The notes under the pieces: model-generated
The model's input: only the letters and a program-made list of their open reading frames with translations
Told to the model about the DNA's origin: nothing
Database searches by the model: none
Made by a program: the position numbers and the translations under genes
In this document: positions 2,772 to 61,900 of the stretch, piece by piece
Position numbering within the stretch: the stretch's first letter is position 1
How the letters are laid out: every line of letters begins with the position of its first letter
Origin: Podarcis erhardii
Lineage: Eukaryota
DNA length: 64,000 bases
Strand: one strand, 5' to 3'
Assembly: GCA_964252035.1 (NCBI GenBank)
Contig: OZ176202.1

Positions 2772-3098
2772 CAGCATTTCAGTTTGTTGTTTCACAAGCA
2801 AGTCAGTATTGTAGTCTTGGACTGCCAGTTTGCTCAGTTTCTCATGTACTTCATTCAGCCAATTCATCAATTCAACTTCATCCTCTCCAAAAATCTGAGC
2901 ATTGCAATAGGCTTGCTGTAGAAGCTGAGCTCTACTGCCACTTTTCTCTCGAATCTCAATGTATTGGGCTTCTGAAGAATCTAGTTTCTCCTGCACCATT
3001 TCCTTATCTTCCTTGGAGCTCAATGCCTTTAAAGCCTGACCAATATTAATAGCTTGCTCCAAATTTTTGTTGCGAGTGGCGATGTCTTCCTCAAAGGC
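2772..3098 (-). CDS. DST: DST exon, 327 nt = 109 aa (AFEEDIA...KQQTEML), phase 0 to 0
   Basis: catttag|GCC acceptor, CTG|gtattt donor; overlaps ORF 2748..3062. Confidence 0.92.
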
Positions 3099-3327
3099 CT
3101 AAATGAAGTTTTCAAAGTAGTAAGAAAAAGAAAAGAAAAACAAGCAAACAAAAGAAACCATAAAACCAAATATGAAGACAACTCAAGAACAACCAAAAGA
3201 ATATAACTTTGATGGTAAAAGAAGAATATAAACAAAGTAATAAAAAAATGTGTTGGGGGGAATACTCCACTTTTGGTTTACAAATCATAAAATAATTGCC
3301 GCAATGAAAGGCACATTAAGATCTTAC

Positions 3328-3487
3328 TTTATGTTGAGAAATCTGCTGTTGTAGTTTGGAAGCCTGTGTTCCAATGGGTTCTGAATTTGAAAGCTTCTTT
3401 TCAGTGATGGTTAGCCACTCAACCAGTGGTTCTAAAGTTTCATGGAATTGCTGTGCTACAGCTGAGATACCTTCCAACTGACGATTC
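3328..3487 (-). CDS. DST: DST exon, 160 nt ([14 protein letters not shown]...ISQHK), phase 2 to 0
   Basis: ttgtag|G acceptor, AAA|gtaaga donor; ORF 3316..3513. Confidence 0.93.
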
Positions 3488-3895
3488 CTACAATATGTGA
3501 AAACAAAGCACATTTTGTGGCATGAGGGATGTATGAAATACTAAAAAGTTAAAACCAGCGCTTGGAAAGAACTACTTCGGTTTAATTATGTTCAATGAAT
3601 TACTTTGAAAATCTCTGAACTACACCTAAAAGTAGTTCCCATAAATGGAAGATTATGGGAGACATCCACTTTACTACAAGAACGGGTGATTATGTGATAC
3701 TGATTTCCCGATATTATTTCACTGAAATTTCTAAAAATAAAACTTGTAATATACTCAGAGCCATTTTCTCATTTAGCTTCAAATGCGAATCTGAAACTGG
3801 ATGAAAATGTTGCTATAGCTCCACATTAGTTTCTAATGCTGTATCAAGGAGTACACCCTACTGTACCCCTAAGTGAATGCAAACATTTCAGGTAC

Positions 3896-4062
3896 CTTGT
3901 TTCTGCTTTATCAAGCAGTGCATCCCATCTGCTATCCAGGAGGCTCAGCTGTTTCAAGATCTTCTCTTTATCAGCGGGCTCTGCTGACTCTGCAATTTTC
4001 TCCCCTTCACGCTTGATTAGTTCAACAGTGGGTCTGCGGTCATCCAGCAATCTCTGGAGAAG
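3896..4062 (-). CDS. DST: DST exon, 167 nt ([10 protein letters not shown]...KAETR), phase 0 to 2
   Basis: ctccag|CTT acceptor, AAG|gtacct donor; ORF 3844..4050. Confidence 0.93.
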
Positions 4063-6509
4063 CTGGAGACAAAATAATCAAAAATCAAATTGCCAGGAAA
4101 TGACTGTTCACTACAAGGCTGTAAAAAGATTAGGAGGCAGATTCTTCAAGGTCTTGTTTACTGGCAAAAAGAGGCAGGCTTAAGGGAACAATTTTCTGAG
4201 ATGGCAGGAAATTGTGAGGGTGCCAGCAGTATTACAATGCAAGTGCCATAAATTGCATAAATAAGTAATTTCATTATGAGAGCGAGCAAACTGTGCCAAT
4301 CTTAGCATCAGTTGTAAAGGTCTAGCATCCTTCCAAATGTTTTCATTCAGATTTCTTTTCAATGCTATCCTGGAAGCTCTGGAAGGGCTACAGATATATA
4401 TGACTTATATGAGGTATGATGTTGACATGTGAAGGGAGAGGGGGGAATCAAGTGGGACATTTTATAACACATGACAGTGCTGGGAACTTTTGGGGAAGCT
4501 TTTCCATTTTGGAAAAAGAAAAGATGGGAAATTTTGCACTTCACCTAAGAACCCTCCCCATCTTTTCAATACGCTGGTGATGTTTGCAACTATCCACTGC
4601 AATCCAGAGAAATATCTGTTTGTTTATATAGTGCTCACCTTTCGAAACACTTGTGGCCGCATTCAATAAGATGAACACAATTCAGGGCTTAATGATGCGC
4701 CTAAGACCAAATTATTTTAATAGGGAATCAAACATGTTATAACATTCTCTGGATTCTGTCCCAAATTTTCAGTACAAACATATGATCATTTTGGAGATTA
4801 TTATGTTGCGCGCAGCTGCAACTTTGGATACTCACTTTGGCCAGACAACCTGAGGACTTTATTCACTAAGCTTCATGCAGTGCTCTTCCCTGAGGGTTGC
4901 CTTCTATGTTTCAGCCAAAAATCCCCCCTTCTCTCTCCTACTGCCTTTTGTTAAGACTGCTCAGAGAGCACAACTTCTCTCTGATGCTGTGCATGCTGTG
5001 ACCTGCTCTTCCCTTGCTCATACATTTATTTTGAACAGGAAAGTAATTATGGATCTGGTTTACAGAGTTTGTTGTGCTGTATTTACTCCACAACTGCCAA
5101 TTCAATATTTAATATGAACCTTCTCCCCCCCCCCTTTTTTTAAGTGAGGGTCTAACAATCCATCAGCAACTGTGTTACAAACAATTGTTGAACAATCTGA
5201 AGCAGGGGTGTTTGACATTATTAACTGAAGATACAGGCACACCAAGATGTTACCCTAAATCAAAACAGATTCTACAAAACTCTAGAGACGGAAGTCAGGA
5301 AGTAAGGGGTGGAGCAGAAGCTGACATCAGGTACAGATTTCATCCCTTGCTAACCCATATGTATAGGCAACTCGTATAAATCCACACTGAATGGCATATA
5401 TGGGAAAAAGAGATTAGCTGAGAAGGGGTGGGGTGGAGGGTTGTCAAAATGATGAAGGAGGATTGAAGCCCTGACAAAATTTTGAACTTTATTTCAACTT
5501 AAGGGAGTAGCTCTACAATGTTCTTCCCCCTGCCCCTTTTCACAATATCAGTGATGTCTTTTCAAACATCAGATTGCTTTTGATCCTTGAAATAATTGTT
5601 TTTGATGTGCATCCAGTGAAATGTACACGTGCATGAAATGATGCCAAGAACCAGCACAGATATTCCAGAGTTTTCCTTGCAATATATACAGAAAACTGGT
5701 CCAATGAAATGATTGTTTGTGCTATACATGGCATCTGTCCCTCCCAGTCTGCACCAGCTCCCCACATTTCCCAAAGAAGTGAAGAAAACCACATTTCCCC
5801 GGACAAAGGATGCAATCAATGCCTGGATGGGAGGCTGCCTGGGAACACCATTGAGTTCCATGGTGAAAGAAGAGCTGGATATAAATTTACATACCAACTA
5901 TTTGTTATATTTCTTGGTCACTTTTCTCATTGAATGAACCAAAGCAATTTAGGGCTCATCCCACACTTCTGCTTGCCTAGCCACTTTCCCCCAGGAAAAC
6001 CCGCTGTCTACCACTGAATCCGAGCCATACAAGTAAAAGGCAGGACTAACAGATCCTGTCCCACTAATATGCTACAGTCTGGATGCCTCTGTTAAAATGA
6101 GTGGAGAATTCCAAAATGAAAGTATCAAAGGGCAAATCTTTAAAGAGAATTTCACAGATTGGGTTGAGAAAATTTGCCCTTCCCCTGAAAAAAGCCAAAC
6201 ACATCCCCCACAGAAGCATCCATGACAACCATCCTAAGTGATGGGATGACAGAGACTATGGAAAGGTATTTTTTTTCAGGTTCTTTTGCAATTGCACCTC
6301 TTATAGCGCACGTCTAATACACACTCAGCCACACTGTTATCCAGGCCGTCACATGTTATTACTGTTATTAATTGCCCACTATTCATCCTAAGGCCCCGGG
6401 TGGGTTACAACATTAACACACAGCTTTAAAAACAGTTTAAAATACCCCACTGAGCAGGTGACAGAGAAAATATAATTAATCTAAAGATAGATAAATAACT
6501 TCCACTCAC

Positions 6510-6680
6510 TTTCTGCTCCTGTATTTGGGCCTTCACAACTTTGAACTCAGCAGATGGAGGCTTCTGATTAGCCACAAGGTCTTCTGTGTCAATAAGCCAG
6601 CTAAGGATAGATTCGACAGCATCTTGAAACCTCCCACAGTGGAGCAGTGCCTCTTGCAACTGGGCTGCTCTTTGAGCAAC
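6510..6680 (-). CDS. DST: DST exon, 171 nt ([16 protein letters not shown]...IQEQK), phase 0 to 0
   Basis: tgttag|GTT acceptor, AAA|gtgagt donor; ORF 6426..6659. Confidence 0.95.
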
Positions 6681-6682
6681 CT

Positions 6683-6765
6683 AACAAACAAAACAAAACA
6701 AAACAAAACAAAACAAAACAAAACAAAACAAAACAAAACAAAACAAAACAAAACAAAACAAAACA
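6683..6765. repeat. (AAAAC)n microsatellite, ~16 units, abutting a DST splice acceptor
   Basis: Directly visible. Confidence 0.97.
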
Positions 6766-7055
6766 TTGTAAATATTATCCTTTTCCCACAATACCTCTTT
6801 CCATCTTCCCAGTCAATCAAACAACCCCTAGGGAAAATAAGAACAATTTAAGGCTAGCAACTCCTAAACTATGAAGCTCTTCACTGACTTGAGTGACATT
6901 CTGTGCACTTCGGCAAATAATTAAAATTGTCTTAATACAGGTATGAACAATACAATGTTTTGTAGCAGTAGGTCATAGGTGAACAAAGTGTGAGGTAGAC
7001 CTGCCTAGGGATAATCCCCAGGGAAGCCTAAGTACTTCATGTGCCTCTTGAATGC

Positions 7056-7295
7056 NNNNNNNNNNNNNNNNNNNNNNNNNNNNNNNNNNNNNNNNNNNNN
7101 NNNNNNNNNNNNNNNNNNNNNNNNNNNNNNNNNNNNNNNNNNNNNNNNNNNNNNNNNNNNNNNNNNNNNNNNNNNNNNNNNNNNNNNNNNNNNNNNNNNN
7201 NNNNNNNNNNNNNNNNNNNNNNNNNNNNNNNNNNNNNNNNNNNNNNNNNNNNNNNNNNNNNNNNNNNNNNNNNNNNNNNNNNNNNNNNNNNNNNN
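7056..7295. other. Assembly gap, 240 N
   Basis: Run of N. Confidence 1.
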
Positions 7296-7400
7296 GCCCA
7301 TCTGGCTGGGTTTCCCCAGCCACTCTGGGCAGCTTCCAACGAAAGATTAAAAATACATTGAAACATCAGTTATTAAAAACTTCCCTAAACAGGGCTGAAG
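7296..7400 (-). mobile_element. L2 LINE 3' end fragment adjacent to the assembly gap
   Basis: gcccatctggctgggtttccccagccactctgggc...aaaaacttccctaaacagggctg resembles lacertid L2 3' ends. Confidence 0.6.
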
Positions 7401-7747
7401 ACAGTTGAGTAGGCATTTTGTTTCAATCAGCATGACACAGAAAGCACCATGAATTATGTTTTGCAATCCTCTATTTCCTTTAGGCTTTTGACTTTCTACA
7501 GGTTTCTTTCCATGGACATTAAAATGACAGGGTACCCATGTGACAAAGGGTAGTCTGCTTCTGTAGGAGCTCTACATAAGCACCAGAGCACACATGGAGT
7601 TCTGGACTGGGGATTTTGTGCATTTTATTATGCAGTCTACTACAATAATGTATAGTACTACTTTGTAGTGAAAATCAGAAATAAGAGCAAAACAAAAACA
7701 ACAGCAAACTAAAAAGGTAAACAACAGTGCAAATACAACTAACATAC

Positions 7748-7909
7748 CTTTTTGTTGAGAGTTTTCCATCTTGTGTTAACATCCTCAAGATCACGCTCAA
7801 GGTTATCAGTACTAGCATTTTTAGCAGCACTCTGAATAAGGCCTTGACCCAACCAATTTACCTCCTGTTGCTTAACCTGCAGTGGTTCAATCTTTTCCTT
7901 CTCGAATAC
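7748..7909 (-). CDS. DST: DST exon, 162 nt ([11 protein letters not shown]...KTLNKK), phase 0 to 0
   Basis: ctgaag|GTA acceptor, AAG|gtatgt donor; ORF 7739..8029. Confidence 0.93.
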
Positions 7910-8426
7910 CTTCAGATCAAAAGGAAAAGAAAGAAAGAAAGGCAAAGGCACATTTAGATTATTAAGTCTGGAACATGCTGAGCATAAGTAACGACCAGAG
8001 CAGATATCAGTAGTAAAATCACACAGCATGTCATGAACATAGTGTTGAAAGACAGTATTTAGCTACAGAGTGTACATGTAAAATTGCTCTTAATGTTGTA
8101 AACACAAAACAACTCAGAGTAAATTATATACACATTAACCCAAACAGGAGTTAAGAAACTGCTATTACATAAAAAAAAACCAAGCACTGTATTTAAAAGG
8201 AAGAGACAAACATAGTGCCCCATACTGAATCTTCCTAATATAGATGCTCAAACAATATTTAAAGCAAAAGGTACACGTTGTGGACACCTATGTCAAACTA
8301 AAGAGGATGACATATTGTGGGTAGTAATTGTTCAGATATCTGTTCACAATAGCCCATTCTTCTTGGGGCTATGCAACTCTGTGCAAACAGTTATCCTTTG
8401 CGTATGGCCAGCAGACACAAGTAGCC

Positions 8427-10109: not shown

Positions 10110-10769
10110 ATTATAGCTTTACTAGCAAATATAGTCCACATCCTGAATATATATTTCAGCTGCCACTAGTAATATCATTCCCTGAATACAAGCAATGTTA
10201 TGGGGATACTACAAGTGTACCTCAGTATGGCTAAAGTTATTTCTCAGAACCTATGAAGCTAGACACTCAAGTAGCCCAGGACACCCAAATTCCTAGAACA
10301 GTCTGAAAATAAAGCGTGTTTATAGTTGATGTACCTCAATATCAGCTTTAAGTAATTTTTATGCTCACATAATTGAAAACAAAAATGATAAGAAGCCTCC
10401 CCAAGTTGGGATACATAAATTGTACACCAAAATGGTCAAGCACAACACTAATAGGAAAGCAGAAACTTGCTATGTACATAGTGTAAGAAACCCAGATTTT
10501 CTAGGATAGTCTGCAAACAGCACATTTTCACACCTAAGTTTACGTCATAACAGCGGCCAGCACTTCAACAGACAGCAAGCACATTTGACACACAGGACAG
10601 TGTGTGACCCATCTCTCCTCAAGGCCTTGAATCCACACAAATAACCGGGAGAAGGGGGTTTCGCAGAGGCAGCAAGGAACTTAAGTCCGAACATGGACAG
10701 CTCACACACATTTGACACTACATGCAATAATCCTCAGACACAGTGGTGTGTTACATAGTAGCAACCAGG

Positions 10770-10770
<1 letters not shown>

Positions 10771-10810
<40 letters not shown>

Positions 10811-10814
10811 ACAC
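10771..10814. repeat. (AC)n microsatellite
   Basis: Directly visible. Confidence 0.95.
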
Positions 10815-12075
10815 AATGCTGTTTTTGATGCACTCAATAGCACTACCTATTTGCAGGACATTGTGGGATTTGTTAAAGCAGAGTTCTGAGGAACCAAGTA
10901 GTTGAAAACAGCAAACAGGTCTTACCTTTCCCACAAAATAATATATAATATGGGCAAGTTCTCTTTACTTTAGAGAAATAAACAAGGGCTGGGATGCAAA
11001 AGCTAATTTACACATACCCAAGTGTTAGCTCAGTAGTATCTTTGGCAATCAAACAGGCAGGCACATGTACACACCCCAGGTTCCATAAACTACTTTTGAA
11101 ATTCCCCTCTCTTTCAAAAGAAGCTTCCTGTGTTTGAGGTTGCTGTGTGAGAAACACAAGTCCTGCTCCAGTTTAGGCCCATGGAACTAGTAATTCAGTA
11201 CTTCAATCCAACTCTCTTCTATTTCAGATGTTCATATACAGTATTTTTAAGATAATTCCATAGCAATCCAAACTGAGTTGTTCCCCTTGATTTGTTGTTT
11301 AGATACACATACCTACTCACAAAAGTAGGACTTGAGGCTAGAGTTTGCCAGAACAGCTTAGCAACAAGTCCTAAAATAACTCAAGACACAACCAGATCAG
11401 AGTGACCAAAAACAAAAAGAACAAAATTAAATTAAAGACTTCACAAGCTCCCCATGCTTATTACAAAGCTGTTTTCTACTTCCTTACTTCATTCACCGCT
11501 CAGTAAATGTTACAAGATCCCTTGTAAAAAAAATCCCCTACAACTTTAGGACTACTTTTTGGCATGAAGATGCAAGGAAATAATTTCAGTACGTGCAACA
11601 AGCCTTTAATCTGTGTACTTTGGAAACCGCAGCAATCTGAGCATCGTTGTGTATACCTTTATGATGAACGGTGCAATCCTATACGTGTCAACTCAGAAGA
11701 AGCATGCCCATCGGGTTTCATGGGCCTTACTCCCATGAAAGTGTGTACAGTATATGGCTGCAGCTGAAATCTGGTTAAATCTGAATAGGGAAGGCCTATC
11801 TGCCCTTGAATGGCATTGGCTGCTTGAAACATAATTTGAGGGGAGGGGAGGAGGGGGTGCTGAACATCAATGCCTAGTGGAAGCATTCCAAATAAAGGGT
11901 AACAGGCACCATCTGGACAATAAATAGCCATGCAACCAAACAGCTGGAAGCAATCAACCCTGTCACAAACTGCCCTTAATCAATTTACTGAAGTGACCAT
12001 CTCGCCAATTTCTGCCTTCTAATAACTTGTTGGGCAAATGATTCTAAAGGAATTCTTTGGGTAGATTAGCAAAAT

Positions 12076-13470
12076 CTAAACATAAGCATTCATGATGCAA
12101 TTACAGAAGAAAAATTTAAAAAAAATATTTAAAAAATAACCCACCCTGCAGCATGAAAAGAATGCATTTAAGTTTGGAATTACCTTATAAGACAACATGC
12201 CATTGCACACTGTATCCAAGGTTTGTTCTATTTGCATGCCTGTAGTCCAAAAGCTGAATTCAGCGCTGATTGGATTTGCTTTTTGACAGCATGTGGTATT
12301 ATTAGCCTCTAAAGCCTGACAGGACAATTCTATTGCACTTGTATGGGCCATATTACTTTCCTCAGTTTCATGCAAAATCACATATTTTACTAAGTCCGTT
12401 TCACTAGCATGTAAAGCTGCATCATCATCATAAATATCTATATCCTGAGTTGCAATATCCAGGAGGTCCTTTTCAATCATCCTGTCTTGGGTGTCTAATG
12501 GCTCATTAACTTTAGCGCTGTTCCTCACTTCCTCTTTGTCTAAAGTGAAATCATGTTCCCTCTCACCATCCAGGAGCCATTGGGGATGTGCTAAGAGGTC
12601 TTCTTTCAAATATGTCAGTGGACTGCAACGTCCATCTCCTTCCCCTTGGTTGCCCTCATAGTTCCAGAAAGGGTCTTGCTCTATATGTGAAGCATTCTGC
12701 AATTTTACTTGACAGTGTCCACTGGTAGGGGCACTTCTGGAGGTAAGCAATGAAATTTGATGTTCACTACTAGAAATGATAGGAGAAAATGATCCAAATT
12801 TACCTACAAACTGATTATCGTCTATGGAAGATATGCTCCTAAATTGAGTTTGTTCCCCTTCTAGCACATCTTGTTTTTCTTCTCTTTCTGCTGGAGGACT
12901 GCACAGACCAGAGTCGTCTTCTTCGGAAGTTAGAGAACTAGTCCCACATTTGACCTGGCCTGTTGCTGCTAAGTCGGACACATCAACAGTCCCAGCAAGT
13001 GAACACTCACTTTTATTTGCATAGTCTGCAAAGTTTGGTGGAACAAGCATCCTCCAGGATCTCCTATGTTCTTTCTTTTCTGTGTGATACTTTGCTTTGG
13101 GCAAGCCAGCTGTTCGAATGATGTCACTGTTCAGCTTAAGGGCATCAAAGATCATTTTTTCATCTAGCTTATTGGCTTCCCGTCCTCTGAGTTCAAAGAC
13201 ACTAGAAGAGGAGAGGGCACCATTGGAGCACAATGTACTAAGGTCCAGTGTTCTATGACTATACGGCAAAGTCCGATCTGAGAAATGCCTGGAGGAGAGG
13301 CTGCCTTTAGAACCTGAGTCAATCTGTTCATTCAGCCGCACTGTGTCATAGATTGACCTCTGGGGAACATAACAGTCCTCAATATTTATATCCTCTTCTT
13401 CTTCATCACCTTTTCCTACACAAGGAGGATTCTGGCGTAAACAGTCTGGCCTGCTCAGCGGCTTCCCCAT
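12076..13470 (-). CDS. KIAA0754-like ORF nested in the DST intron (464 aa if unspliced; 429 codons if spliced at the donor after 12184); probable alternative first coding exon
   Basis: ATG at 13470 in strong Kozak context (gaaATGG) with an in-frame TAA at 13513-13515 upstream. The first ~150 aa carry the motifs MGKPLSRPDCLR, EDCYVPQRSIYDT, KLDEKMIFDALKL and RRSW, which I recall from the N-terminus of KIAA0754 nested in MACF1. Confidence 0.82.
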   Translation of the reverse strand: MGKPLSRPDCLRQNPPCVGKGDEEEEDINIEDCYVPQRSIYDTVRLNEQIDSGSKGSLSSRHFSDRTLPYSHRTLDLSTLCSNGALSSSSVFELRGREANKLDEKMIFDALKLNSDIIRTAGLPKAKYHTEKKEHRRSWRMLVPPNFADYANKSECSLAGTVDVSDLAATGQVKCGTSSLTSEEDDSGLCSPPAEREEKQDVLEGEQTQFRSISSIDDNQFVGKFGSFSPIISSSEHQISLLTSRSAPTSGHCQVKLQNASHIEQDPFWNYEGNQGEGDGRCSPLTYLKEDLLAHPQWLLDGEREHDFTLDKEEVRNSAKVNEPLDTQDRMIEKDLLDIATQDIDIYDDDAALHASETDLVKYVILHETEESNMAHTSAIELSCQALEANNTTCCQKANPISAEFSFWTTGMQIEQTLDTVCNGMLSYKVIPNLNAFFSCCRVGYFLNIFFKFFFCNCIMNAYV

Positions 13471-13989
13471 TTCTGCAGGAATTAACAGGTCTAGCACTGC
13501 TGCTAGGCTATCTTATTGGAGACACGCAACACACATAAAGTAAAAATTAAAATAAAGTAATAGAAAAGCAGTTTTTAAAAAGTACAGTAAACTTGCCCTC
13601 AGCAGAAAGATGCTTACATACTAAAACACAGGAAATAATTTATGAGGCGGTTAAGGTCGTAATCAGTGCATCTGTGTAAGTTTACCTGGCTGTGATTTAA
13701 AACATTTCTCCCCCTGCCCCTAAAATATAAAGTGCTTGAGCTTAAGGGGGTGGGGAGAGGGGAAACAAAAAACCCCCACACCTTTTAATATTTTAAAATA
13801 CTAACTCAATGCACAAAGACATCAACAAAATGTACAAACCCCCAAACCTCAGGAAAATCTTTAAGTGGCTCAAAAGACTCAGAACTTCCCACATAGCATT
13901 CCATTTCAATTTTTAGGTCAAAATGTGTGTCTTAAATCTCCAGATTAAGTCTTCAAAATGAATCAGCATTATAGCAGGCAGCACGCTAT

Positions 13990-14900
13990 ATTCAGGAGGT
14001 GACAGATTAACTGTAATCCATTTAAATGGCTTGCAGAATTCCATCTCCTTTATAAATAAGCCATGTTGTGGACGCTTTTGAAGAAAAACAAACCAGAAGA
14101 GCTGTGGACTGTGGAGACCAAGGCACAGAGAAAGGCTTCAGGAAAAACAAAGGTATATCCAGAGTTGTAATAATAATAATAATAATAATAAAAGAAGAAG
14201 CTTTCTCCCCCTTTTTTGGCAGCAGCTATAAATAACCTCGATTCAAAAGGCAGTTTATTCCTTGCTTCCTTAAAGCTTCTCTGTGGCGCGTTCAGAAGTT
14301 CCATGGGAAACACAACAGTTTTCTGAGGAGCCAGACCAATGAAATAATAATACAAAAAAGCAACGGAACAGAATTAGTAGAAAAAGAAACTTTCCCCCCA
14401 GTTTCACTCGCAGAACACATTCCTTGAAAGTTGTTGTCCTGTTTTAAGGCAACACAGCAGGAAACTAGAGCGTTTCTTCCTCCACTCCGGCACAAAGGCA
14501 CAACAGATTCACATTCTGTTTAAATTCAGCAGGACTTTTTTTCTTTTTTTTTCTTTTTTTGCATAAACGGTGGCTAAAAGAGCGTGGTCACTGTTTTCAT
14601 CTCCGTCTTGAAGCGCAGCTGTAGCGAAGAAGGCATTAAAAAGAGCTCACAACAATAAACGCTCACATGTCCTGCCCAGCGCAGCTGATAAGCTTTCCGG
14701 CTCTCCCTGGTTTCTTATGGTCTGACAGGCATCCCTCCCAATAGTGAGCTTAAAAGAAACGCCCTTTGCTATTCTTTAGGCAACATCTGCTCCTATCGCA
14801 TTCGTTCCCTGAGTATTATTCCAACCGAGCATTAGGAGGTGCCTGACCTCTTAGCTCTTCCCCCTTACGCTTCCTGCCCCACATGACTTTACTTAGCCAT
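13990..14900 (-). promoter_or_regulatory. Candidate internal promoter / 5' region for the nested KIAA0754-like exon
   Basis: About 20 CpGs counted by eye in 14280-14880, well above the flanks; two GCGCAGCTG E-box motifs (14613, 14679); TATA/MEF2-like TTATTTATAAAGG on the minus strand at 14047-14059. Confidence 0.35.
14166..14191. repeat. (TAA)n microsatellite
   Basis: Directly visible. Confidence 0.9.
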
Positions 14901-17900
14901 CTTTCACTTTTACTGTTTGTCTTGTCTCTGAACGAGGCTGAGCCTTTTCAGGGGGAGGTGCACAAAGGAGCAAGTTCCTGTCTGCAGCACTCCTGCATAT
15001 CGGAGTCTGTGCTCTGTAATTCTGGAGGAAAAGAGGGTGGGTGGGTGGTGGCTCACAAGCAGAATGGAAAAACCGGTGCTAATTAGTTCAAAATGTCAAA
15101 AATTTAGTACATATTGCTTAACCGGGTAACCTGACACCATACAAATAGGGACCAGACTACCCAGGACCCTTCTAAAACACTGACAAACTGCACTTTTTCT
15201 GCTTCATAACAAAAATAATAATCCAGTACTTACAAATCATGCAGATTAACAGGAATCTGAATATAGTGGATGGTCACTTTTAATGGTATGTAGCATTTTA
15301 AACTAAACTAACCAGCTGTATAATAAGAATTCAATCAAATTGAATTACTTTCCACCATCACCATAAATCAATTTTAATTAACAGCCAGATCTTACTTCTT
15401 AGCAAGCCCCATGAAAAATCTCCATAGGATTGCATCCTTCACTCTATATTTGTAACACATGTACATTATATTCTATAATTAGGGATTTAGCCAGCAAATT
15501 GGTCTCTCTGAATGACTACAGAATGCATTCTTCATTCACAATCCAGTTAATCCAATGAAAAGGGATTTGCTTGATATTTTTTTACACTTCCTAGCTCTCA
15601 GACAACTGCAAATCCTAACATGCAAAGAAGTGCTGCAACTTTTCAGAAATTTCACCCAGTACTCCTAAAAACCGCACTCTATTGAGGTAATAGCATGAGT
15701 GGTTTTACTTATTTGTTTCTGGATCTCTTTAGATGGAAGGCATATTATATTTTTAATAAAATAAATAGCTAAAGCACTGAAGAGAGTAAAAATAATACAG
15801 AGCAAGGAGAGCAGCTCATTTCTTAAAGCTGGTGTATTGTTAATTTATTTGCCATATGTATACCAGCATATCTACATATAAAAATGCCCACGTTGTTAAC
15901 AACCATCATGTCCCACTAAAAAGACAATGTTTCATACCACAAGATGCAGTCACAACAAACCATATACAAAAACTACAGCAGAAAAGGATCCACTCCCTTG
16001 GGAAGGCAGCACTATAAGAAGGGATAGTTGAAGATAGGAATGAAGTTTCTGACAGTCCACTGTCATACATATTCACTACTCCAAACTAAATCTTATTGTG
16101 TGCCACGAAGGATATTCCCAAATAAAGTGCAGCAAGTGTTTTCAAAGCAGTGGCCCTGGATGGGGGGCAGGAGACACTATCTGGGCTCTGCTTCAAGCAG
16201 CAAAATGGGTCAGTACTGGAATGACAATGAACCTTAAGACCCTCCTTTGAAGGAAGTCTGTCACTCCCAACCCAGAATGTATTTATAGTCAGCTGAGCAT
16301 GGATTTGTTGAACAGGCACTGTACATGTCCAAGGCAGCACCTGAACACGCAGCTACTCCTTCCATTTAAAAGAATGGGGAAGACCATCTGTAAAGGAGCT
16401 CCATGTGAGCATTAGAATATACAGAGGGCTCTGGACAAAGGATAAGGTCTGTATGCAGGTAGCCACCCCAAATGTATGTTGAGTTTTTTCTTTAATGTAG
16501 TGATAATAAATTATTATTCTTTTTTAATTTTATATTTAAGCTGCAAAACAGATGCAAATATTGAAGTTGATGCAGCAACAAAATATAATTTTACTTTTGA
16601 AGGCGCCTGTGAAGAAACCACATACTTCAGGGAAGACTTAACACATTGCACTGATTCAATCAACAAGGTAAGAGGCCACCATCTACGACACCAACCTAAA
16701 CCAATTTAAATATTAGTTCAAGCTCATCAACTGGAATATTCATCCAGGCCCAGAGCTCCTATGAAGCGCAATTAGAAGGAACCTCTTGACATATATCTGA
16801 ACACTGGAAATATACTGAAACGACCCTTTCCGCATCTAGTAATGGTCTAAATGGGGGAGGGGATTTAATGAGCCATTCAGTGATAGAAACTGACATAAAT
16901 TCCATGTGCTTTAATAAATAAAAGAATAAATAAAGAGTGTAGCAGGTTTATGGCTGAAATATTTTGCAGACATTTCAAGGATTGTAATTACGTGGCAGAG
17001 ATTGAATGCTGCGTCCCCACAACCCCACCCTAGCATGAAGTAGCTCATTAAAATGTTCAGCAAAATACAAACTAAACAAGGGCTTTTGTTTTTCAGGATC
17101 ATCTTAGCTGGTTGGCTCTTTGTGAGGAAACGGGCATGGTGTAACCCAAGTAAAGCAAGTTCATCTGCTGAATTTTTCTTTTGCCCACGTTCATTCAATG
17201 CGTACTTTCTTTAAAGCACAAAGGTCTACAATAAAACTGAATGAAAGTGAGAGAATGAAAGAGAAACACCATGAAATACAATATGCCAGCTACTGTAAGT
17301 AACTGAAAATGTAGCTTTGATTGGAAACACTGGAAGATTTGTTCTTGGGTAGGATTTCTGAATACAAAACAAAATCCTCTTTTCTTTATGTAAATACCGA
17401 TAGATAAGATATAAGAACTACAAGCAGACAATCTTCTTCTCAGCTACCCAAAAGCAATACTCGTTAAAAGTGGACTGACTACTGTTAATTGTAAAAATAT
17501 ATGCTTATGGACCACCGTTCTTGGTAATGATTTCAAAGCAGAGTCACTAGTCGCAATTCCAATTTGCTATTCCCTTCCTCCAATGAGCTTGGGACTACCA
17601 CTTGACCTTTATTACTTTACTATTACTTAGTGGTCTGCTTTGCACGTCATGTTGTATATTCGTTTGTTTATTTCACAACATTTATATACCACTGATCATA
17701 ATAAAACCTCAGAGCGGTTTACAAAAAGAATAAACCAGTAACAATAACAGTAAAAAAAAAATCACTAAAAACAAGTATTTATAACATTCAAAACAAGTAA
17801 AAACATCAATAAGCTAAAACTGGGTCCAGGCACTGTTCCAAGGCATGCACAACTGCTCCTAATTCAGATGTTATGGCTGAGTGACACCAGCATACTTATG

Positions 17901-23914: not shown

Positions 23915-25389
23915 CTTAAATACGTTCAGCTGCTGATTTATCGTCTCAATTTCCATTCCAACAGACCCCTGGGACTCTTCATGCTCTTCAACTTCCCCAA
24001 GCAGTTTAGAAAACCCCTTTAGTTTACTGTAGAACTCTTCAACGCGGCTAATAGTCCCTTCAATCTGTTCATCTCTGGCTTTTGCTCTATCTAGCAACTT
24101 GTTGCACTGCTTATTTAAAGCCTCCAAGTCCCTTTTTATACCTGCAAGATCTGGAGAAGCTTCAGCTTCATTTGCTAGCATCATTTTGCAGGTATTATTT
24201 GCATTTTCATTACTGGTTATGAGTTCCTCCAACTTTTTCAGGAAAGTTTTTATATCCTTTCGCTGTGACTGCAGTGTGACAAGATCCCTACCCACAGAAT
24301 CCATGCTGTCCAATTCATCGTCGAACTCTGCAAACTGAGAAAACATCTCTCGGATGCTGTTTTGGAAATGGCCAATTCCCTGGAGTTTAGTCTCCAGGAA
24401 TGAACATTTATCTTCAACCTGCTGACTGATGGTGCTGAATTCTTCTTCTAATGTTTCTGCCTGCAACAAGAGGTCAGAGACACCTGATGAATCTGAAGCA
24501 TCTGCCACCAGTTCTTGGGCAAGCTTTTTTGTAAGGTCCACTTGAGCCTTCACAGCCTGGAGTGTTTTCTGCTGAGCCTGCATAATCGTCAAGTGTTTGT
24601 TACTGTAAGTCTGGGGTTTGAGAGAATCGTGTGTTTCCAGCTGTTCTCTGACATTCTTCAGCTGCTCTTCAACATCCTTTGATGACTCTTGAAACTCTTT
24701 CAGTCTCTGAGACATCTTTTCCAGACCATCTCTCTTAGCATGCAGTTGTTCTGTGACTATATCCATGTTCTGGATCAGCAGTGTCTTCTCCTCTTCAATA
24801 ATGTCTTTGTCTGTCTGACAGGCACTGAGTAATGTTTCAGCTGCATTACATAATAGCTCCACCAACCCTTGGTGTTTGTCTAGGTCCTTCTGCCAGCTCT
24901 TCACCTGAGTGATGGAATTCTCTAGTCGAGCAGGATCTATGCTCATTTCTATTTGAGAGATATTGCTTTGGCATTTCGCTATCCAGGGTTGTAGGTTTTC
25001 TACATGCTCTCTGTATCTAAGGGCTTTTTCCAAACAATCATTTAATTTATCTTGCCTTTCTTTAACTTGCTTGTTCATTTCATCCCAGTTACCTCTGAGC
25101 AAGTTCAGCTGGGCCTGCAGCTCAGCCTTTTCCGCTCCCTGAGTCTTCTGGAGTAAACTTTCGCCTTCTGCGATGATTTTTTCATAAGAACCAGTCTGGT
25201 CAGACAAGGCAGCCTTGAACTCTTTCTGATCATCAATTAATGTCCACAGAGACTCCAGCTTGGTAGAGATGGGACAAGGCTGATTCTGTTCTTCCTTCTT
25301 TTTGTCCAACCAGGCCTGAAAGTCCTTAGACATTTGCTGGAACTGATGAGAACTAACGTAAGTTGACTGAAGTTGCTCAATGTGATTGC
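23915..25389 (-). CDS. DST: DST large exon, 1475 nt, several spectrin repeats (GNHIEQLQ...QQLNVFK), phase 1 to 0
   Basis: ctgcag|GC acceptor, AAG|gtaaga donor; 533-aa ORF 23888..25489. Confidence 0.96.
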
Positions 25390-25902
25390 CTGCAGAAGAC
25401 AAACAAACAAACAAACAAACAAAAGTTCTTAAAATCCGTGTCTTTGAGTGGCTTCTAACTAGGATTTTGGTTGATTTTAATTTAATCAAAGAAACATTAT
25501 GTTATAGGAAAATGCACCCTATTGCAATTTGAGATGTTTTATTAAACATTATTCTTCATTGGAGCTTGTTAGCTGATGAGTTTATTGAAGACCACCAGAT
25601 TGGAAAATAATAGTATTGCAGCCTAAAATAATAACCCCTTGGATAATAATAATAATCCCTTGACAACAAGGGATTCTTGAGGGTGGGGAACTAATCAGGT
25701 AACCAGGATAGTATGATCACTAGTGCCACTTTAAACATCACAAACATAAACAACATGCACTATGAACAGTAAAGCTTGCAGTAATCCCTCAACAGTCATT
25801 GAGATAAAATGCTTCCAAAGATCACTGCCAGTCCTGTTACAAGATTACAGAACTCCTGTTGGGACTCCCTTGTTGAGTCTGAAACACACCCTCCCCAAAG
25901 GA

Positions 25903-58642: not shown

Positions 58643-58944
58643 CTGAAAATATTATTGTCATTTTAGTGTAACTAGAACTTATCAACACAGTAGCAGAAAA
58701 ACACTTTTAAAAACAAAAAGGAGGGTGTGTGTTTTTAAAAACAAATGCCTGGAGATGCAATTTAAATGTTCATCTGTGATTCTACTATGATGTTAACCAG
58801 GGGACATTCAATTCCTTGTGATAGGCGATATAGGTGCCATGTTTTGATTATGCTAACAAGCGCAAGCACCAAAATGAACCAAAGATGTTTTTCATTTGTT
58901 TTACGTGTCTTTGCTTAAGACAAAAATTGTAAGTTGCTACTCAC

Positions 58945-61900
58945 CATGCTCTTTGAATCAGGTCTTGGTCCAGATTCCTCTGTTTCCAAGGTTTCAGAGA
59001 AGCATTTTGGTTGCTGGTATGGCTTCTCAGGCGGAGGGTATCCTTTCAAACCAAGAGCCTTACTGCATGCTTCAGTACTCTCTCCAGCAGTTTCTGCTTC
59101 TAATCCCGATGAACTTGTAGTTTCTCTTGAGATGGGAAAGGCATGGTCATGCTGAGAAGCGTTTTTCTCCTGCTCTCTTTCTGTCTGGGCTTTCATGTCC
59201 ATTGTCTCACGGGTGCTCTCATTTCTTTGACTGCAGTGGTCTTGTTTCAGTATATCAAGGAGGAGATCAGGACTTCTATTATCAAGCCAAATAGGTGGGG
59301 TAGAAGTAGGTTCGTTTGCATGTATGCACAACGAAGCAGCCATTGAGGCACTTCTAGTATCCTCACTTGTATGCTGGACATCAGATTTGGTAGGGTCCTC
59401 GTTTTCCCAGTGTGTGCTATCAACCATTTTAAGTAAATTTTGCATTAAAGCTTTTGTGCCAATATAACTTAAAGGTTCCTCTTCCTGCTTGCAGTAAACA
59501 TCTTTTATTTTTCCTTTAAGTATTTTTGTTAAGCTTTCAGGTAATGTAGGAGGCACTTCAGAAAAAACAACTTCCTGATCATTGACTGGGGCAGAATTAG
59601 AAAGCATCACATCTTTTAGTGATTGTCGCATTTTTGTCTGGATGCCATTTTGAGAGAAAGTAGGCTCATGGTCTAGAATGTCATCTTCTGCAGGCTTCCC
59701 CACACTACTGTTTTGAGTGACCACTGCTTCATGTGCTTTCTGCTCAGAGCTATTCTGGCTATCATCTCTGGTGCCTAAAGTACTAGAAGAAGATCCAATT
59801 ACCCATGGATCTTCTCCAGAAGCTGTTTCATCAGCCTTGCTCCCTACTTTTCCAATAGCTTCAACATGCTCCATATTGTTGAAGTCACATCTGTAGCTTT
59901 CATCATGATACACCTTGGAATGAGCACTAGCCTCTTTGCTAACTTTATCTCTTGTAGGCTCTGATACAACTGATGCAGGAAAAAGCTGTTGTTTGGGGTG
60001 CAATTCTTTTAGGTGCTGTTTTCCTTCGCAGTTTCCACTTCCTGATACCACAAGCTCCTCTCTATTCTCTTCACTGTCTCTTTCACCTTCCTTTAGGCAA
60101 GATGAACCATTCTCTCTCATCGCCAAGATATCCTTGGCCATTATATCTTTCGCACTTTGCTTTAAATATGTAGAGAGGTCAAACCCCTCTACATAGTCCA
60201 CTGATTCATCTTTAGCAATGTCATTGGAGTCTGTAACCAATGTGGGCTTATTTGAAGTTTGATCAATACTTATTTTTCCATCATATGAGGCAGTAATTTC
60301 ATAACCATTTTTAATAACTGATGAATGAGGCTCCCTAAGGCTTCCACTTGATTCCTGGATATGATCTTCCTTCAGAATGCACACTCCATTTTTATTTTGT
60401 TTCAGCACACCAATTTCTACTTGACTATGTGGCATACTGGTAGATGCTTGTTTTCCATTATCTACTTCTTGTCTTTTCTCACAATTCAAACATGGCATTG
60501 ATATATCATCAAGAATTTTAGCTTCCCTGTGTTCAGCATGTAAGTTTCTTTGAGAAGGTATATCAGACTTGGCACTAATATTTTCTGTTCCAATTGCGTC
60601 TTCTGATGTTGCACCATTGCTTAAGCTTAATTGGGAGGTTTGACTGTTCTGTAATGCAAGATTGTCTTGCATGAAAGGGTCAGAAGCCTGTTCTGTTTCT
60701 TGCTGGCTTCCCTCTTTACTTTTACATGGTAGGTCCTGAATGTTTTCTTTAACAACATCAGCTAAATTTTGATATTCATCAGCACTGTAGCTTTCAGGGC
60801 ACCGTAAACCATTGTTTCCTGTTGCCTCTGAAAGTGCAGACACCTGGACCCCAATGTTTTTATCATGGCACTGAGAGTAATGCATTTCCAATACCTCTTC
60901 ATCTTCATAATCTGTCTCATCATAAGTATCATAATCAAAATCCACATAATCATAACCTTCAAAATCATCCCCACTGTCACTGTCACCATTATCGCTACTG
61001 CCATTATCATCACTATTGCTACTGCCATCATCATCACTGTCATCCATACATATGCTTTCATGTTCACTCTCAGAGTCATCGTCTTTCATTTTAATGCCCT
61101 TGTGCTCACCTCTTTGCATTTTAGCTTCATCCAACTTTTCCAGGGAGCTGTCAATCTCTTCACTTTCTTCCCTTTCTTTTTTCTGACCATTATCTTCTAT
61201 ATCTCTACTGCTTTCTGCCTTGTCTTCTAGAATTGTGCCTAGTAGCCTTGCATTGAATGCTGCCATATTTATAATTTCAAGTGTATCAGAGTCACTTGTT
61301 TCACTAAAGCACAGAATGCATTCTTCTTCCTTACTTAGGTTGCCCGTGGAAGATTTTGCTTTTTCTTGCAGCTTATCTGCTACTCCATTGATAGCTACTG
61401 CACTGTGGACGAGTTCTGGAGTAGCATCTTCTTTAGCAACAGAGGAGTCACCCTTGTTTATTCTGTCTGAGCTATAAACTGTACCATTGTTATGATCAAT
61501 TTGTGGAGCATCACAGGCTTCACTGCAATCTTTATGTTGAGTTGGATCACAAGGATCTTCTGACTGAGTACCATGTTGTCTTTTAGGCAACAGCTCAGAT
61601 TGCTTGCTGTTATTGCCTTCCAGAACTAGCGAGCCACATTCAAATGTTGACTTGCTGTCATTCACAGGTGGTTCATCATGCTTCATACTAGTACTGACTT
61701 CCAGAGGTGATGTGGACTCACTATCAGTATTGATTTTAATGGATGATCCATCAAGAGTGTCAGTAGTGACTCCTACTGGGAGCCCAGCATTTGTATCAAT
61801 GGAATCCTTGAGTGGACATCCAGCATGAGTAATAGCACCGTTTCTCTGAATTGGTCCAATATATTTATCTTCAGTATGATATTCCAACAGTGCAATGCCA

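What the first reader, a model, noticed from the sequence alone, without database searches (positions are those of the whole stretch)
12076..13470. Nested KIAA0754 paralog inside the 16 kb dystonin intron
Seen: a 464-codon same-strand ORF with a strong Kozak ATG and an upstream in-frame stop, with no spectrin-repeat character. Recalled knowledge: its first ~150 aa share motif blocks (MGKPLSRPDCLR, EDCYVPQRSIYDT.R.NEQID.GSK, KLDE..IFDALKL.SD, RRSW...P.NF) with KIAA0754, a poorly characterised ORF nested in an intron of the paralog MACF1. Inference: this nested module predates the DST/MACF1 duplication and defines an uncharacterised N-terminal domain shared by both spectraplakin loci, usually annotated only as hypothetical or -like.
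Basis: partly seen in the sequence, partly recalled or inferred. Interest (0 to 1): 0.8.

Follow-up and report, generated by a model that had tools for sequence, protein, structure and literature searches.

The report
First exon of short dystonin isoform
The intronic ORF is real and ancient, but it is not a separate nested gene: it is the alternative first coding exon of a short dystonin isoform that lacks the actin-binding and plakin parts, a form already in databases but never studied functionally.

Summary
A 464-codon ORF lies on the minus strand (ATG at 13470, stop at 12076-12078) inside a 16,005-nt intron of a spectraplakin gene. Flanking exons and a tree identify that gene as DST.

- **Exon boundary:** only codons 1-429 (13470..12184) behave as coding. 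They end at an AAG|GTAA donor conserved from whale shark to lizards, in phase with the next DST exon (7909..7748).
- **Constraint:** against Elgaria the exon has two indels, both multiples of three, and dN/dS of 0.25 (0.04 for codons 1-160). Frame-breaking indels begin 35 nt past the donor.
- **Transcripts and models:** gene models of 2,400-2,700 aa named Dystonin, from lizard, snake, turtle, bird and mammals, start with this exon and continue into spectrin repeats, EF-hands and a GAS2 domain. Four intron-free Logan contigs of 9-10 kb do the same, and two of them end in an A run.
- **Paralogy:** homology to KIAA0754 is confirmed (E 8e-42). KIAA0754 is itself the equivalent first exon of "MACF1, isoforms 6/7", and a hagfish model shows the same junction.
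- **Structure:** the conserved 160 residues have no predicted fold. They read as a likely lipid-anchor motif plus short helices.

A 2017 spectraplakin review probably refers to this exon. The scan's first stage had also noted the in-frame donor and the lipid motif in this same window. Existence is already known; function is open.

The parts
12184..13470 (-). Alternative first coding exon of the short DST isoform (429 codons, phase 0 at its 3' end)
   Evidence: Homologs found. Colinear mapping of Dystonin short models. Against Elgaria only two indels, of 9 and 6 nt. dN/dS 0.25.
13411..13470 (-). Codons 1-20, MGKPLSRPDCLRQNPPCVGK: candidate N-myristoylation site (G2, S6, R7) with invariant Cys10 and Cys17 as candidate palmitoylation sites
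   Evidence: M1 G2 K3 P4 L5 S6 P8 C10 C17 are invariant in 46 sequences from hagfish to mammals. Function is inferred from the rules for GK-starting NMT substrates.
13318..13377 (-). Codons 32-51, DCYVPQRSIYDTVRLNEQID: the most conserved block; residues 40-51 are a predicted helix
   Evidence: Invariant columns. AlphaFold2 helix 40-51 with block pLDDT about 85.
13132..13167 (-). Codons 102-113, LDEKMIFDALKL: second conserved block, within a predicted helix at residues 104-119
13039..13065 (-). Codons 136-144, RRSWRMLVP: third conserved block
   Evidence: S138 and W139 invariant; R136, R137 and P144 at least 90% conserved.
12892..12939 (-). Codons 178-193, SSLTSEEDDSGLCSPP: block specific to the DST type, containing DSGLCS, which fits the DSGxxS beta-TrCP phosphodegron pattern
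   Evidence: S179 L180 T181 S182 E184 D186 S187 G188 L189 S191 P192 are invariant in 8 DST-type sequences. The block is absent from the MACF1 type. The degron reading rests on the motif pattern only.
12182..12183 (-). GT of the conserved splice donor (AAG|GTAAT)
   Evidence: The same AAG|GTAA donor is present in Elgaria and whale shark genomic DNA. The junction ...SYK|VFEKE matches ...SDK|VFEKE in the Phrynosoma model.
12076..12183 (-). Read-through tail of the ORF (35 codons plus stop): intron, not conserved coding sequence
   Evidence: Ten mostly frame-breaking indels against Elgaria in the 684 nt after the donor, the first at 12149. The tails are unrelated in 8 species.
13513..13515 (-). 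In-frame upstream stop (TAA)
7748..7909 (-). Next DST exon (54 codons, phase 0-0), acceptor for both the canonical upstream exon and the alternative first exon
23915..25489 (-). Canonical upstream DST spectrin-repeat exon region, ending at a phase-0 donor at 23915. The 5' coordinate is the ORF start, not a mapped exon boundary.
   Evidence: This exon is absent from the 5'UTRs of the transcript contigs.
14550..15000 (-). Candidate internal promoter or transcription start region (inferred)
   Evidence: 87-93% identical to Elgaria against about 78% for the surrounding intron. It has the highest CpG observed/expected ratio of the region, 0.64. It lies 1.1-1.5 kb upstream of the ATG, and three of the transcript contigs carry 5'UTRs of 1.0-1.1 kb.

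Best explanation
The ORF is the alternative first coding exon of a short dystonin (DST) isoform, transcribed from an internal promoter inside the 16-kb intron in the spectrin-repeat rod.

**Shown**
- Translation starts at the ATG at 13470.
- The exon ends after codon 429 at the AAG|GT donor at 12184.
- It is spliced in frame to the exon at 7909..7748.
- In other species the resulting protein is about 2,400-2,700 aa. It has this unique N-terminus followed by the distal spectrin repeats, EF-hands and the GAS2 domain, and it lacks the actin-binding, plakin and plakin-repeat regions.
- It is the DST counterpart of the exon known as KIAA0754, which begins 'MACF1, isoforms 6/7'.
- The exon already existed before the two genes separated.

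**Inferred**
- The unique region is mostly disordered.
- Its invariant start MGKPLSRPDC...C is myristoylated on Gly2 and probably palmitoylated on Cys10 and/or Cys17. This would tether the microtubule-binding half of dystonin to a membrane.
- Two short conserved helices (residues 40-51 and 104-119) and the RRSW block would act as docking motifs for unknown partners.
For: **Structure (shown)**
- Dystonin short models from Phrynosoma, Pseudonaja and pig map colinearly onto the window: 13470..12178, then 7912..7742, 6680..6507, 4032.., 3489.. and 3098... Identity is 75-98% for the lizard model. Snake MACF1 reaches only 39-79%.
- About 70 annotated proteins of 1,900-3,400 aa begin with this module and carry Spectrin, EF-hand and GAS2 Pfam domains.
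- Logan contigs L001-L004 (9.1-10.1 kb) hold uninterrupted ORFs of 2,636-2,690 aa, whereas the same exons are spread over more than 11 kb in the window. L003 and L004 end in an A run. Their 5'UTRs contain stops and no upstream DST exon.
- The donor is conserved in lizard and shark. The AG just upstream of the window's ATG is not conserved, so this is a first exon rather than a cassette exon.
- Against Elgaria there are 2 in-frame indels within the exon, and 10 and 12 mostly frame-breaking indels in the flanks.
- dN/dS is 0.044 for codons 1-160 and 0.37 for codons 161-429, with dS 0.39.
- The tree places the window in the squamate DST clade with 100/100 support.
- In Elgaria the ORF lies inside, and on the same strand as, a gene whose 7,902-aa product has CH, plakin and spectrin domains.

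**Mechanism (inferred)**
- G2, K3, S6, C10 and C17 are invariant.
- GK-starting peptides such as ARF6 (GKVLSK) and the NCS proteins are NMT substrates that depend on G2 and an S6-K7 motif (PMC7044312; bioRxiv 10.1101/2021.06.22.449375).
- Another DST N-terminus, BPAG1a3, already carries a myristoylation motif (PMC3352950).
- AlphaFold2 gives no fold, only two helices.
Against: - No RNA data from this species were available, so use of the promoter and of the 12184-to-7909 junction here is inferred from orthologs.
- Many of the long models are automatic predictions.
- NCBI annotates stand-alone products of 430-487 aa in Elgaria and whale shark. A short product may therefore also exist.
- For the lipid anchor, Lys at position 3 is the least favourable context for NMT. 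Position 7 is Arg here, not the Lys of the studied S6-K7 motif.
- In the contigs behind P0002 and P0003 an in-frame AUG 13 codons upstream would bury Gly2 if it were used.
- No experiment on this N-terminus was found.
Confidence: 0.88

Rival explanations
1. An independent nested gene. The transcript reads through the donor and ends in the intron, giving a free-standing protein of about 464 aa.
For: - RefSeq has stand-alone models: Elgaria LOC134397954 (487 aa, read-through) and whale shark LOC125483062 (430 aa).
- The shark model uses the conserved donor but joins a mini-exon about 570 nt downstream that adds three residues.
- A 2.4-kb Logan contig also reads through the donor.
Against: - The tail after the donor is unrelated between species. 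It accumulates frame-breaking indels between two lizards, starting 35 nt past the donor.
- There is no AATAAA downstream of the donor within the 1.7 kb scanned. Only an ATTAAA lies about 470 nt after the stop.
- Full-length spliced transcripts exist.
- This product could coexist as a minor form but does not explain the conserved in-phase donor.
Confidence: 0.09
2. A cassette or poison exon of full-length DST, spliced in through the AG at 13472-13471 just upstream of the ATG. It would shift the frame and trigger mRNA decay.
For: The window reads ttaattcctgcag|aaATG, which looks like a splice acceptor.
Against: - That AG is absent in Elgaria, whale shark and the transcript contigs.
- The transcript 5'UTRs continue through this point and contain no upstream DST exon.
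- Strong purifying selection on the protein, dN/dS 0.04, is not expected of a poison exon.
Confidence: 0.02
3. A chance ORF, or a decaying pseudogene copy of the MACF1 exon.
For: None beyond its location in an intron.
Against: - 47 homologs were found, 43 at E<=1e-10.
- It groups with DST orthologs, not with MACF1.
- It has no stops, and only in-frame indels.
Confidence: 0.01

Closest known systems
KIAA0754, the first exon of 'MACF1, isoforms 6/7' (UniProt O94854)
   Same: - The N-terminal roughly 160 residues are homologous (45-59% identity, E down to 1e-46).
- It sits in the same intron position and joins the homologous next exon.
- It has the same architecture downstream: spectrin repeats, EF-hands and GAS2.
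   Different: - It is a paralog, not an ortholog, and forms a separate clade.
- The MACF1 exon is about 1,090-1,130 codons against 367-429 in DST.
- MACF1 lacks the SLTSEEDDSGLCSP block and differs in signature residues: CLGKG and YDTMRINEQIDQG against CVGKG and YDTVRLNEQIDSG.
Annotated short Dystonin models in other vertebrates (Phrynosoma, Pseudonaja, Pelusios, Haliaeetus, pig, bats, whales; 2,096-2,690 aa)
   Same: They are orthologous, with the same first exon, the same junction and the same following exons.
   Different: There is only species-level divergence. The snake exon is shorter, at 367 codons.
BPAG1-a3/b3 (dystonin isoform 3) N-terminus
   Same: It is another alternative-promoter N-terminus of the same gene that carries a conserved myristoylation motif (PMC3352950).
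   Different: That isoform starts at the 5' end of the gene and keeps part of the actin-binding domain and the plakin domain. The sequences are unrelated.
Internal-promoter short isoforms of other giant spectrin-superfamily genes (dystrophin Dp260/Dp140/Dp116/Dp71; short nesprins)
   Same: The logic is the same: a unique first exon inside the rod region yields a C-terminal-only protein. This rests on established knowledge and on titles retrieved (PMC3388047, PMC1790709).
   Different: The unique first exons of the dystrophin short forms are only a few codons long. Here the exon encodes 429 residues, including a block of 160 residues that is very highly conserved.
GK-starting N-myristoylated proteins (ARF6 GKVLSK; hippocalcin/NCS1 family)
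   Same: Gly2-Lys3, Ser6 and a basic residue at position 7 are shared.
   Different: - This is a motif resemblance only, not homology.
- Position 7 is Arg in most of the sequences here.
- No experimental test exists for this protein.

Membership tests
KIAA0754 / 'MACF1 isoforms 6/7' N-terminal module family | Sequence homology of the first roughly 160 residues | tested here: met
   phmmer E 8e-42 to 'KIAA0754 homolog' from Hyaena, and 1e-46 to 1e-10 to about 40 other clusters. There are 25 invariant columns across 46 sequences.
KIAA0754 / 'MACF1 isoforms 6/7' N-terminal module family | Location in the equivalent rod-region intron of a spectraplakin gene, on the same strand, joined to the homologous next exon | tested here: met
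   In MACF1, DST and hagfish models the module abuts the homolog of exon 7909..7748 at that exon's first residue. The host gene in Elgaria is on the same strand.
DST ortholog (as opposed to MACF1) | Groups with proteins named Dystonin, and flanking exons are closer to DST than to MACF1 | tested here: met
   The squamate DST clade has 100/100 support and the DST clade 96/95. Flanking exons are 88-98% identical to lizard Dystonin and 39-79% to snake MACF1.
Alternative first exon of a spliced short isoform | Conserved in-phase donor, coding constraint that ends at the donor, and transcripts joining it to downstream exons without upstream exons | tested here: met
   Donor conservation. Indel pattern. 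Intron-free contigs L001-L004. These transcripts come from other species; this species' own RNA was not available.
Independent nested gene | Own conserved stop codon, C-terminus and polyadenylation site within the intron | tested here: not met
   Tails after the donor are unrelated between species. Frame-breaking indels start 35 nt past the donor. The scan of 12184..10500 found no AATAAA and a single ATTAAA at 11610.
N-myristoylated (and palmitoylated) proteins | Met-Gly start, Ser or Thr at position 6, a basic residue at position 7, nearby Cys residues, and demonstrated NMT modification | tested here: inconclusive
   The sequence features are present and invariant and are compatible with the rules for GK-starting substrates. 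However, Lys3 is unfavourable, position 7 is Arg, and the modification itself cannot be tested with these tools.
Globular protein domain | Confidently predicted fold, or similarity to a solved structure or Pfam family | tested here: not met
   AlphaFold2 with 46 sequences gives mean pLDDT 53.5 and pTM 0.18, with only two short helices. No PDB sequence match at E<=1, no Pfam family, and Atlas scores below 0.8.
beta-TrCP phosphodegron (DSGxxS) | A conserved D-S-G-x-x-S motif in a disordered region, and binding to beta-TrCP | not testable with these tools
   DSGLCS is invariant in 8 DST-type sequences, but the pig sequence differs. This is a pattern match only.

The most novel reading that the evidence does not exclude
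The invariant N-terminal module shared by the short DST and MACF1 isoforms may be a dual-lipid membrane anchor combined with two partner-docking helices. It would turn the microtubule-binding C-terminal half of both vertebrate spectraplakins into a membrane-to-microtubule tether that works without actin binding. The DST version would additionally be controlled by a beta-TrCP-type degron. Such a form has been kept since before the hagfish-gnathostome split. It is missing from the standard lists of four promoters and eight isoforms, and it would be spared by 5' DST and MACF1 alleles but hit by 3' ones.
Probability: 0.35. Interest if true: 0.55.

Novelty: already known. Interest (0 to 1): 0.33.

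Why it matters
- **Annotation:** the ORF should be annotated as the first exon of a DST isoform. It should not be called an 'uncharacterized LOC', and it is not a new gene family.
- **Gap in the literature:** the isoform is absent from the working models of the gene. PMC7413632 lists four start sites and eight isoforms, and the PMC3352950 passages retrieved mention no rod-internal start.
- **Conservation:** the N-terminal 160 residues are among the most conserved parts examined, with dN/dS 0.04 and an opening that is invariant from hagfish to mammals.
- **Genetics:** mutations in the 3' half of DST or MACF1 would remove this form, whereas mutations in the actin-binding or plakin regions would not. 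This may matter when reading allele-specific phenotypes such as HSAN-VI and dystonia musculorum alleles.
- **Open question from 2017:** a review left open whether the conserved extra exon is 'its own isoform or an alternative start site'. The evidence gathered here favours the alternative start site.

Tried and rejected
- **Pfam:** a scan of the ORF found nothing.
- **ESM Atlas:** a feature search with residues 1-160 gave only sub-threshold hits (0.78 or lower) to disordered proteins, treated as noise.
- **AlphaFold2:** a run with a 46-sequence alignment gave no fold. No fold search was run because the model is unreliable.
- **PDB:** a profile search against PDB sequences found nothing.
- **Rfam:** a scan across the whole intron found nothing.
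- **5'UTR mapping:** BLAST of the transcript 5'UTRs against the window, meant to locate the start site, found no similarity beyond about 15 nt upstream of the ATG. The promoter position therefore rests on lizard-to-lizard conservation only.
- **Literature:** searches for KIAA0754 function, for the peptide itself, and for an internal DST or MACF1 promoter returned only gene-list mentions. The Kazusa-clone myristoylation screen does not mention KIAA0754 or MACF1 in its main text.
- **Splice acceptor at 13472-13471:** considered and rejected because it is not conserved.
- **Not attempted:**
  - Retrieval of the human sequences.
Full report
**1. The observation**

- From the ATG at 13470 it has 464 codons.
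- The start context is gcagaaATGG, with a purine at -3 and G at +4.
- An in-frame TAA lies 15 codons upstream, at 13515-13513, with no ATG in between.

The surrounding gene is also on the minus strand.
- Spectrin-repeat exons lie on both sides, and a large plakin-repeat ORF sits at 58915-63999.
- The canonical upstream exon ends at 23915 (...VFK|gtaaga). The next exon starts at 7909 (ag|GTATTCGAG...). Both boundaries are phase 0, and the intron is 16,005 nt.
- Pfam finds nothing in the ORF.

**2. It is a conserved coding sequence, but only up to a splice donor**

An exhaustive phmmer search gave 47 relatives. Almost all start with MGKPLS[RK]P.

An alignment of eight DST-type sequences shows conservation collapsing at one column. 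After it, most sequences read V, the translation of GTN, followed by unrelated tails of different lengths. In the window this column is AAG|GTAATT, so the exon ends at 12184 after 429 codons in phase 0.

The same AAG|GTAA donor is present in genomic DNA of the lizard Elgaria and of the whale shark.

A MAFFT alignment of 4.3 kb of the window with the Elgaria locus gave this indel pattern:
- Two indels in the 1,287-nt exon, of 9 and 6 nt.
- Ten indels in the next 684 nt (5, 1, 8, 6, 1, 1, 7, 5, 11 and 2 nt), the first only 35 nt past the donor.
- Twelve indels in the 830 nt upstream of the ATG.

Nei-Gojobori estimates against Elgaria, with dS 0.39, similar to intron divergence:

| Codons | dN/dS |
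|---|---|
| 1-429 (whole exon) | 0.25 |
| 1-160 | 0.044 |
| 161-429 | 0.37 |

**3. What it is spliced to**

A search with the first 160 residues, allowing long proteins, returned about 70 proteins of 1,900-3,400 aa. They begin with this module and carry Spectrin, EF-hand and GAS2 domains. Their source names fall into two sets:
- 'Dystonin', from Phrynosoma, Pelusios, bear, meerkat, pig, bats, whales, beaver, a titi monkey and teleosts. A bald-eagle relative carries a 'dystonin-like' model, and unnamed entries of the same architecture come from Pseudonaja and Gopherus.

The Dystonin models map onto the window colinearly. For the Phrynosoma model the mapping is:

| Residues | Window coordinates |
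|---|---|
| 1-431 | 13470..12178 |
| 429-485 | 7912..7742 |
| 484-541 | 6680..6507 |
| 551-596 | 4032..3895 |
| 596-650 | 3489..3325 |
| 650-758 | 3098..2772 |

- Identity is 75-98% for the lizard model.
- Rattlesnake MACF1 reaches only 39-79% on the same exons.
- The model junction ...LDTVCNGMLSDK|VFEKEEIEPLQ equals the junction predicted in the window...LDTVCNGMLSYK|[11 protein letters not shown].

Four Logan contigs provide transcript evidence beyond gene models.
- They come from four different sequencing runs and are 9.1-10.1 kb long.
- They contain uninterrupted ORFs of 2,636-2,690 aa. The first seven exons alone span 11 kb in the window, so these are spliced RNAs.
- Two end in an A run.
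- Their 5'UTRs are 384 nt in L001 and 1,023-1,090 nt in L002-L004. They contain in-frame stops and nothing orthologous to the upstream DST exon; the best tblastn identity anywhere in the contigs is 24%.

The AG that precedes the window's ATG is not present in Elgaria, in the shark or in the transcripts. The exon therefore starts a transcript rather than being inserted into the full-length one.

**4. Which gene, and how old**

- In Elgaria the ORF lies inside, and on the same strand as, a gene whose 7,902-aa product has CH, plakin, plectin and spectrin domains. In the whale shark the host product is 8,469 aa.
- A maximum-likelihood tree of the N-terminal 220 residues separates a MACF1 clade (98/97) from a DST clade (96/95). 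The DST clade includes whale shark, sturgeon, teleosts and tetrapods.
- The window falls in the squamate DST clade (100/100), outside Elgaria+Phrynosoma+Pseudonaja.
- A hagfish Ensembl model sits between the clades on a long branch. It has the same module (a 607-residue exon) joined to the same next exon.
- Fish, frog, snake, bird and marsupial MACF1 models all join their 1,090-1,130-residue exon to the homolog of 7909..7748.

**5. KIAA0754**

- The link is real: 'uncharacterized protein KIAA0754 homolog' from Hyaena matches at E 8e-42.
- That protein aligns with the wombat short MACF1 model only over about the first 1,050 residues, and it contains no match to the next exon. This is consistent with a read-through of the MACF1 exon, although the end of that exon was not mapped in Hyaena.
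- Databases have already re-read KIAA0754. [quoted passage not shown]
- A spectrin-rod peptide is assigned to both Q9UPN3 and O94854|K0754_HUMAN (PMC13167194).
[quoted passage not shown] The figure is not held, so I could not confirm that it means this exon, but it very probably does.
- Other accounts of DST count four start sites and eight isoforms, none of them in the rod (PMC7413632; the PMC3352950 passages retrieved mention none).
- No paper on the function of KIAA0754 or of this peptide was found.

**6. What the unique region looks like**

Across 46 sequences the following columns are invariant:
- M1 G2 K3 P4 L5 S6 P8 C10 C17.
- D32 Y34 P36 Q37 R38 S39 Y41 D42 T43 N47 E48 I50.
- L102 K112.
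- S138 W139.

AlphaFold2 with this alignment gives no fold, with mean pLDDT 53.5 and pTM 0.18. It predicts only two helices, at residues 40-51 (block pLDDT about 85) and 104-119 (about 75). No PDB sequence, Pfam family or Atlas cluster is related. It is better described as a disordered region carrying conserved short motifs than as a domain.

DST-type sequences have one extra invariant block, SLTSEEDDSGLCSP. It contains the DSGxxS pattern of beta-TrCP degrons. This is a pattern match from general knowledge and has not been tested.

**7. Likely mechanism**

Shown: an internal-promoter isoform made of this N-terminus plus the distal rod, EF-hands and GAS2 domain.

Inferred: membrane tethering by N-myristoylation of Gly2 and palmitoylation of Cys10 and/or Cys17.
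- After removal of Met1 the N-terminus is GKPLSR. ARF6 (GKVLSK) is an NMT substrate (PMC7044312).
- GK-starting peptides are G-myristoylated in a way that depends on G2 and the S6-K7 motif (bioRxiv 10.1101/2021.06.22.449375).
- Caveats:
  - Lys3 is an unfavourable context.
  - Position 7 is Arg in most species.
  - In the contigs behind P0002 and P0003 an in-frame upstream AUG would bury Gly2 if used.
- I put the lipid-anchor reading at about 0.5-0.6. The partner-docking role of the helices is plausible but untested.

**8. Verdict**

- The paralogy and antiquity claims are supported.
- The 'nested gene' reading is replaced by 'alternative first exon of a short DST isoform'.
I tested the first fully and the second in part.
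- The feature is already annotated in many vertebrates, including lizards and snakes, so it is not new. Its function has not been studied.

Noticed in passing
window 11899-11974 (minus strand), about 210 nt downstream of the exon's donor: A deeply conserved non-coding element. It is 94% identical to Elgaria and 77.6% identical over 76 nt to whale shark (E 5e-10), at the same distance from the donor in both species. It contains TGACAG (Meis-like), CAGCTG and CAGATGG (bHLH E-boxes). Indels rule out coding, and Rfam has no hit. It is a likely enhancer, possibly serving the internal promoter.
   Followed up: partly
window 14550-15000 and 13950-14099: Blocks that are 87-93% identical to Elgaria, against about 78% for the surrounding intron. 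The first block has the highest CpG observed/expected ratio of the region (0.64). It is the candidate promoter or start region of the short isoform.
   Followed up: partly
L006 (whale shark) about 7840-7860: The RefSeq stand-alone model uses the conserved donor but joins a mini-exon about 570 nt downstream that adds only Leu-Ser-Glu and a stop. This could be a real short product or an annotation artefact.
   Followed up: no
L001 about 347-384; proteins P0002 and P0003: Some species have an AUG about 38-39 nt upstream of the main start. It is out of frame in L001 and in frame in P0002 and P0003 (MSRAAIFVLTIYK-MGKP...). The roughly 40 nt upstream of the ATG are loosely similar across amniotes.
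   Followed up: partly
window about 7040-7300: A run of N (assembly gap or masked stretch) in the intron between exons 7909..7748 and 6680..6507.
   Followed up: no
window 58915-63999 (minus strand): An ORF of 1,694 codons with plectin-type repeats at its start, followed by a long, acidic, low-complexity stretch. It is presumably the plakin-repeat exon of the DST-b type isoform. It begins at or beyond the window's end.
   Followed up: no
window about 6690-6800 and about 14170-14200: Simple repeats: an (AAACA)n-like run that produces 'KTKQN' repeat ORFs, and a (TTA)n run.
   Followed up: no
proteins P0040, P0042-P0044 and P0047: A divergent group with an altered N-terminus (MGKPLSRPGCFRQSPCC..., EDGYIPQRSIYDTMCINE). 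In the tree P0040, P0043 and P0044 fall within the teleost MACF1 clade, probably as an extra paralog. They join the Arapaima and Paramormyrops sequences on long branches.
   Followed up: no
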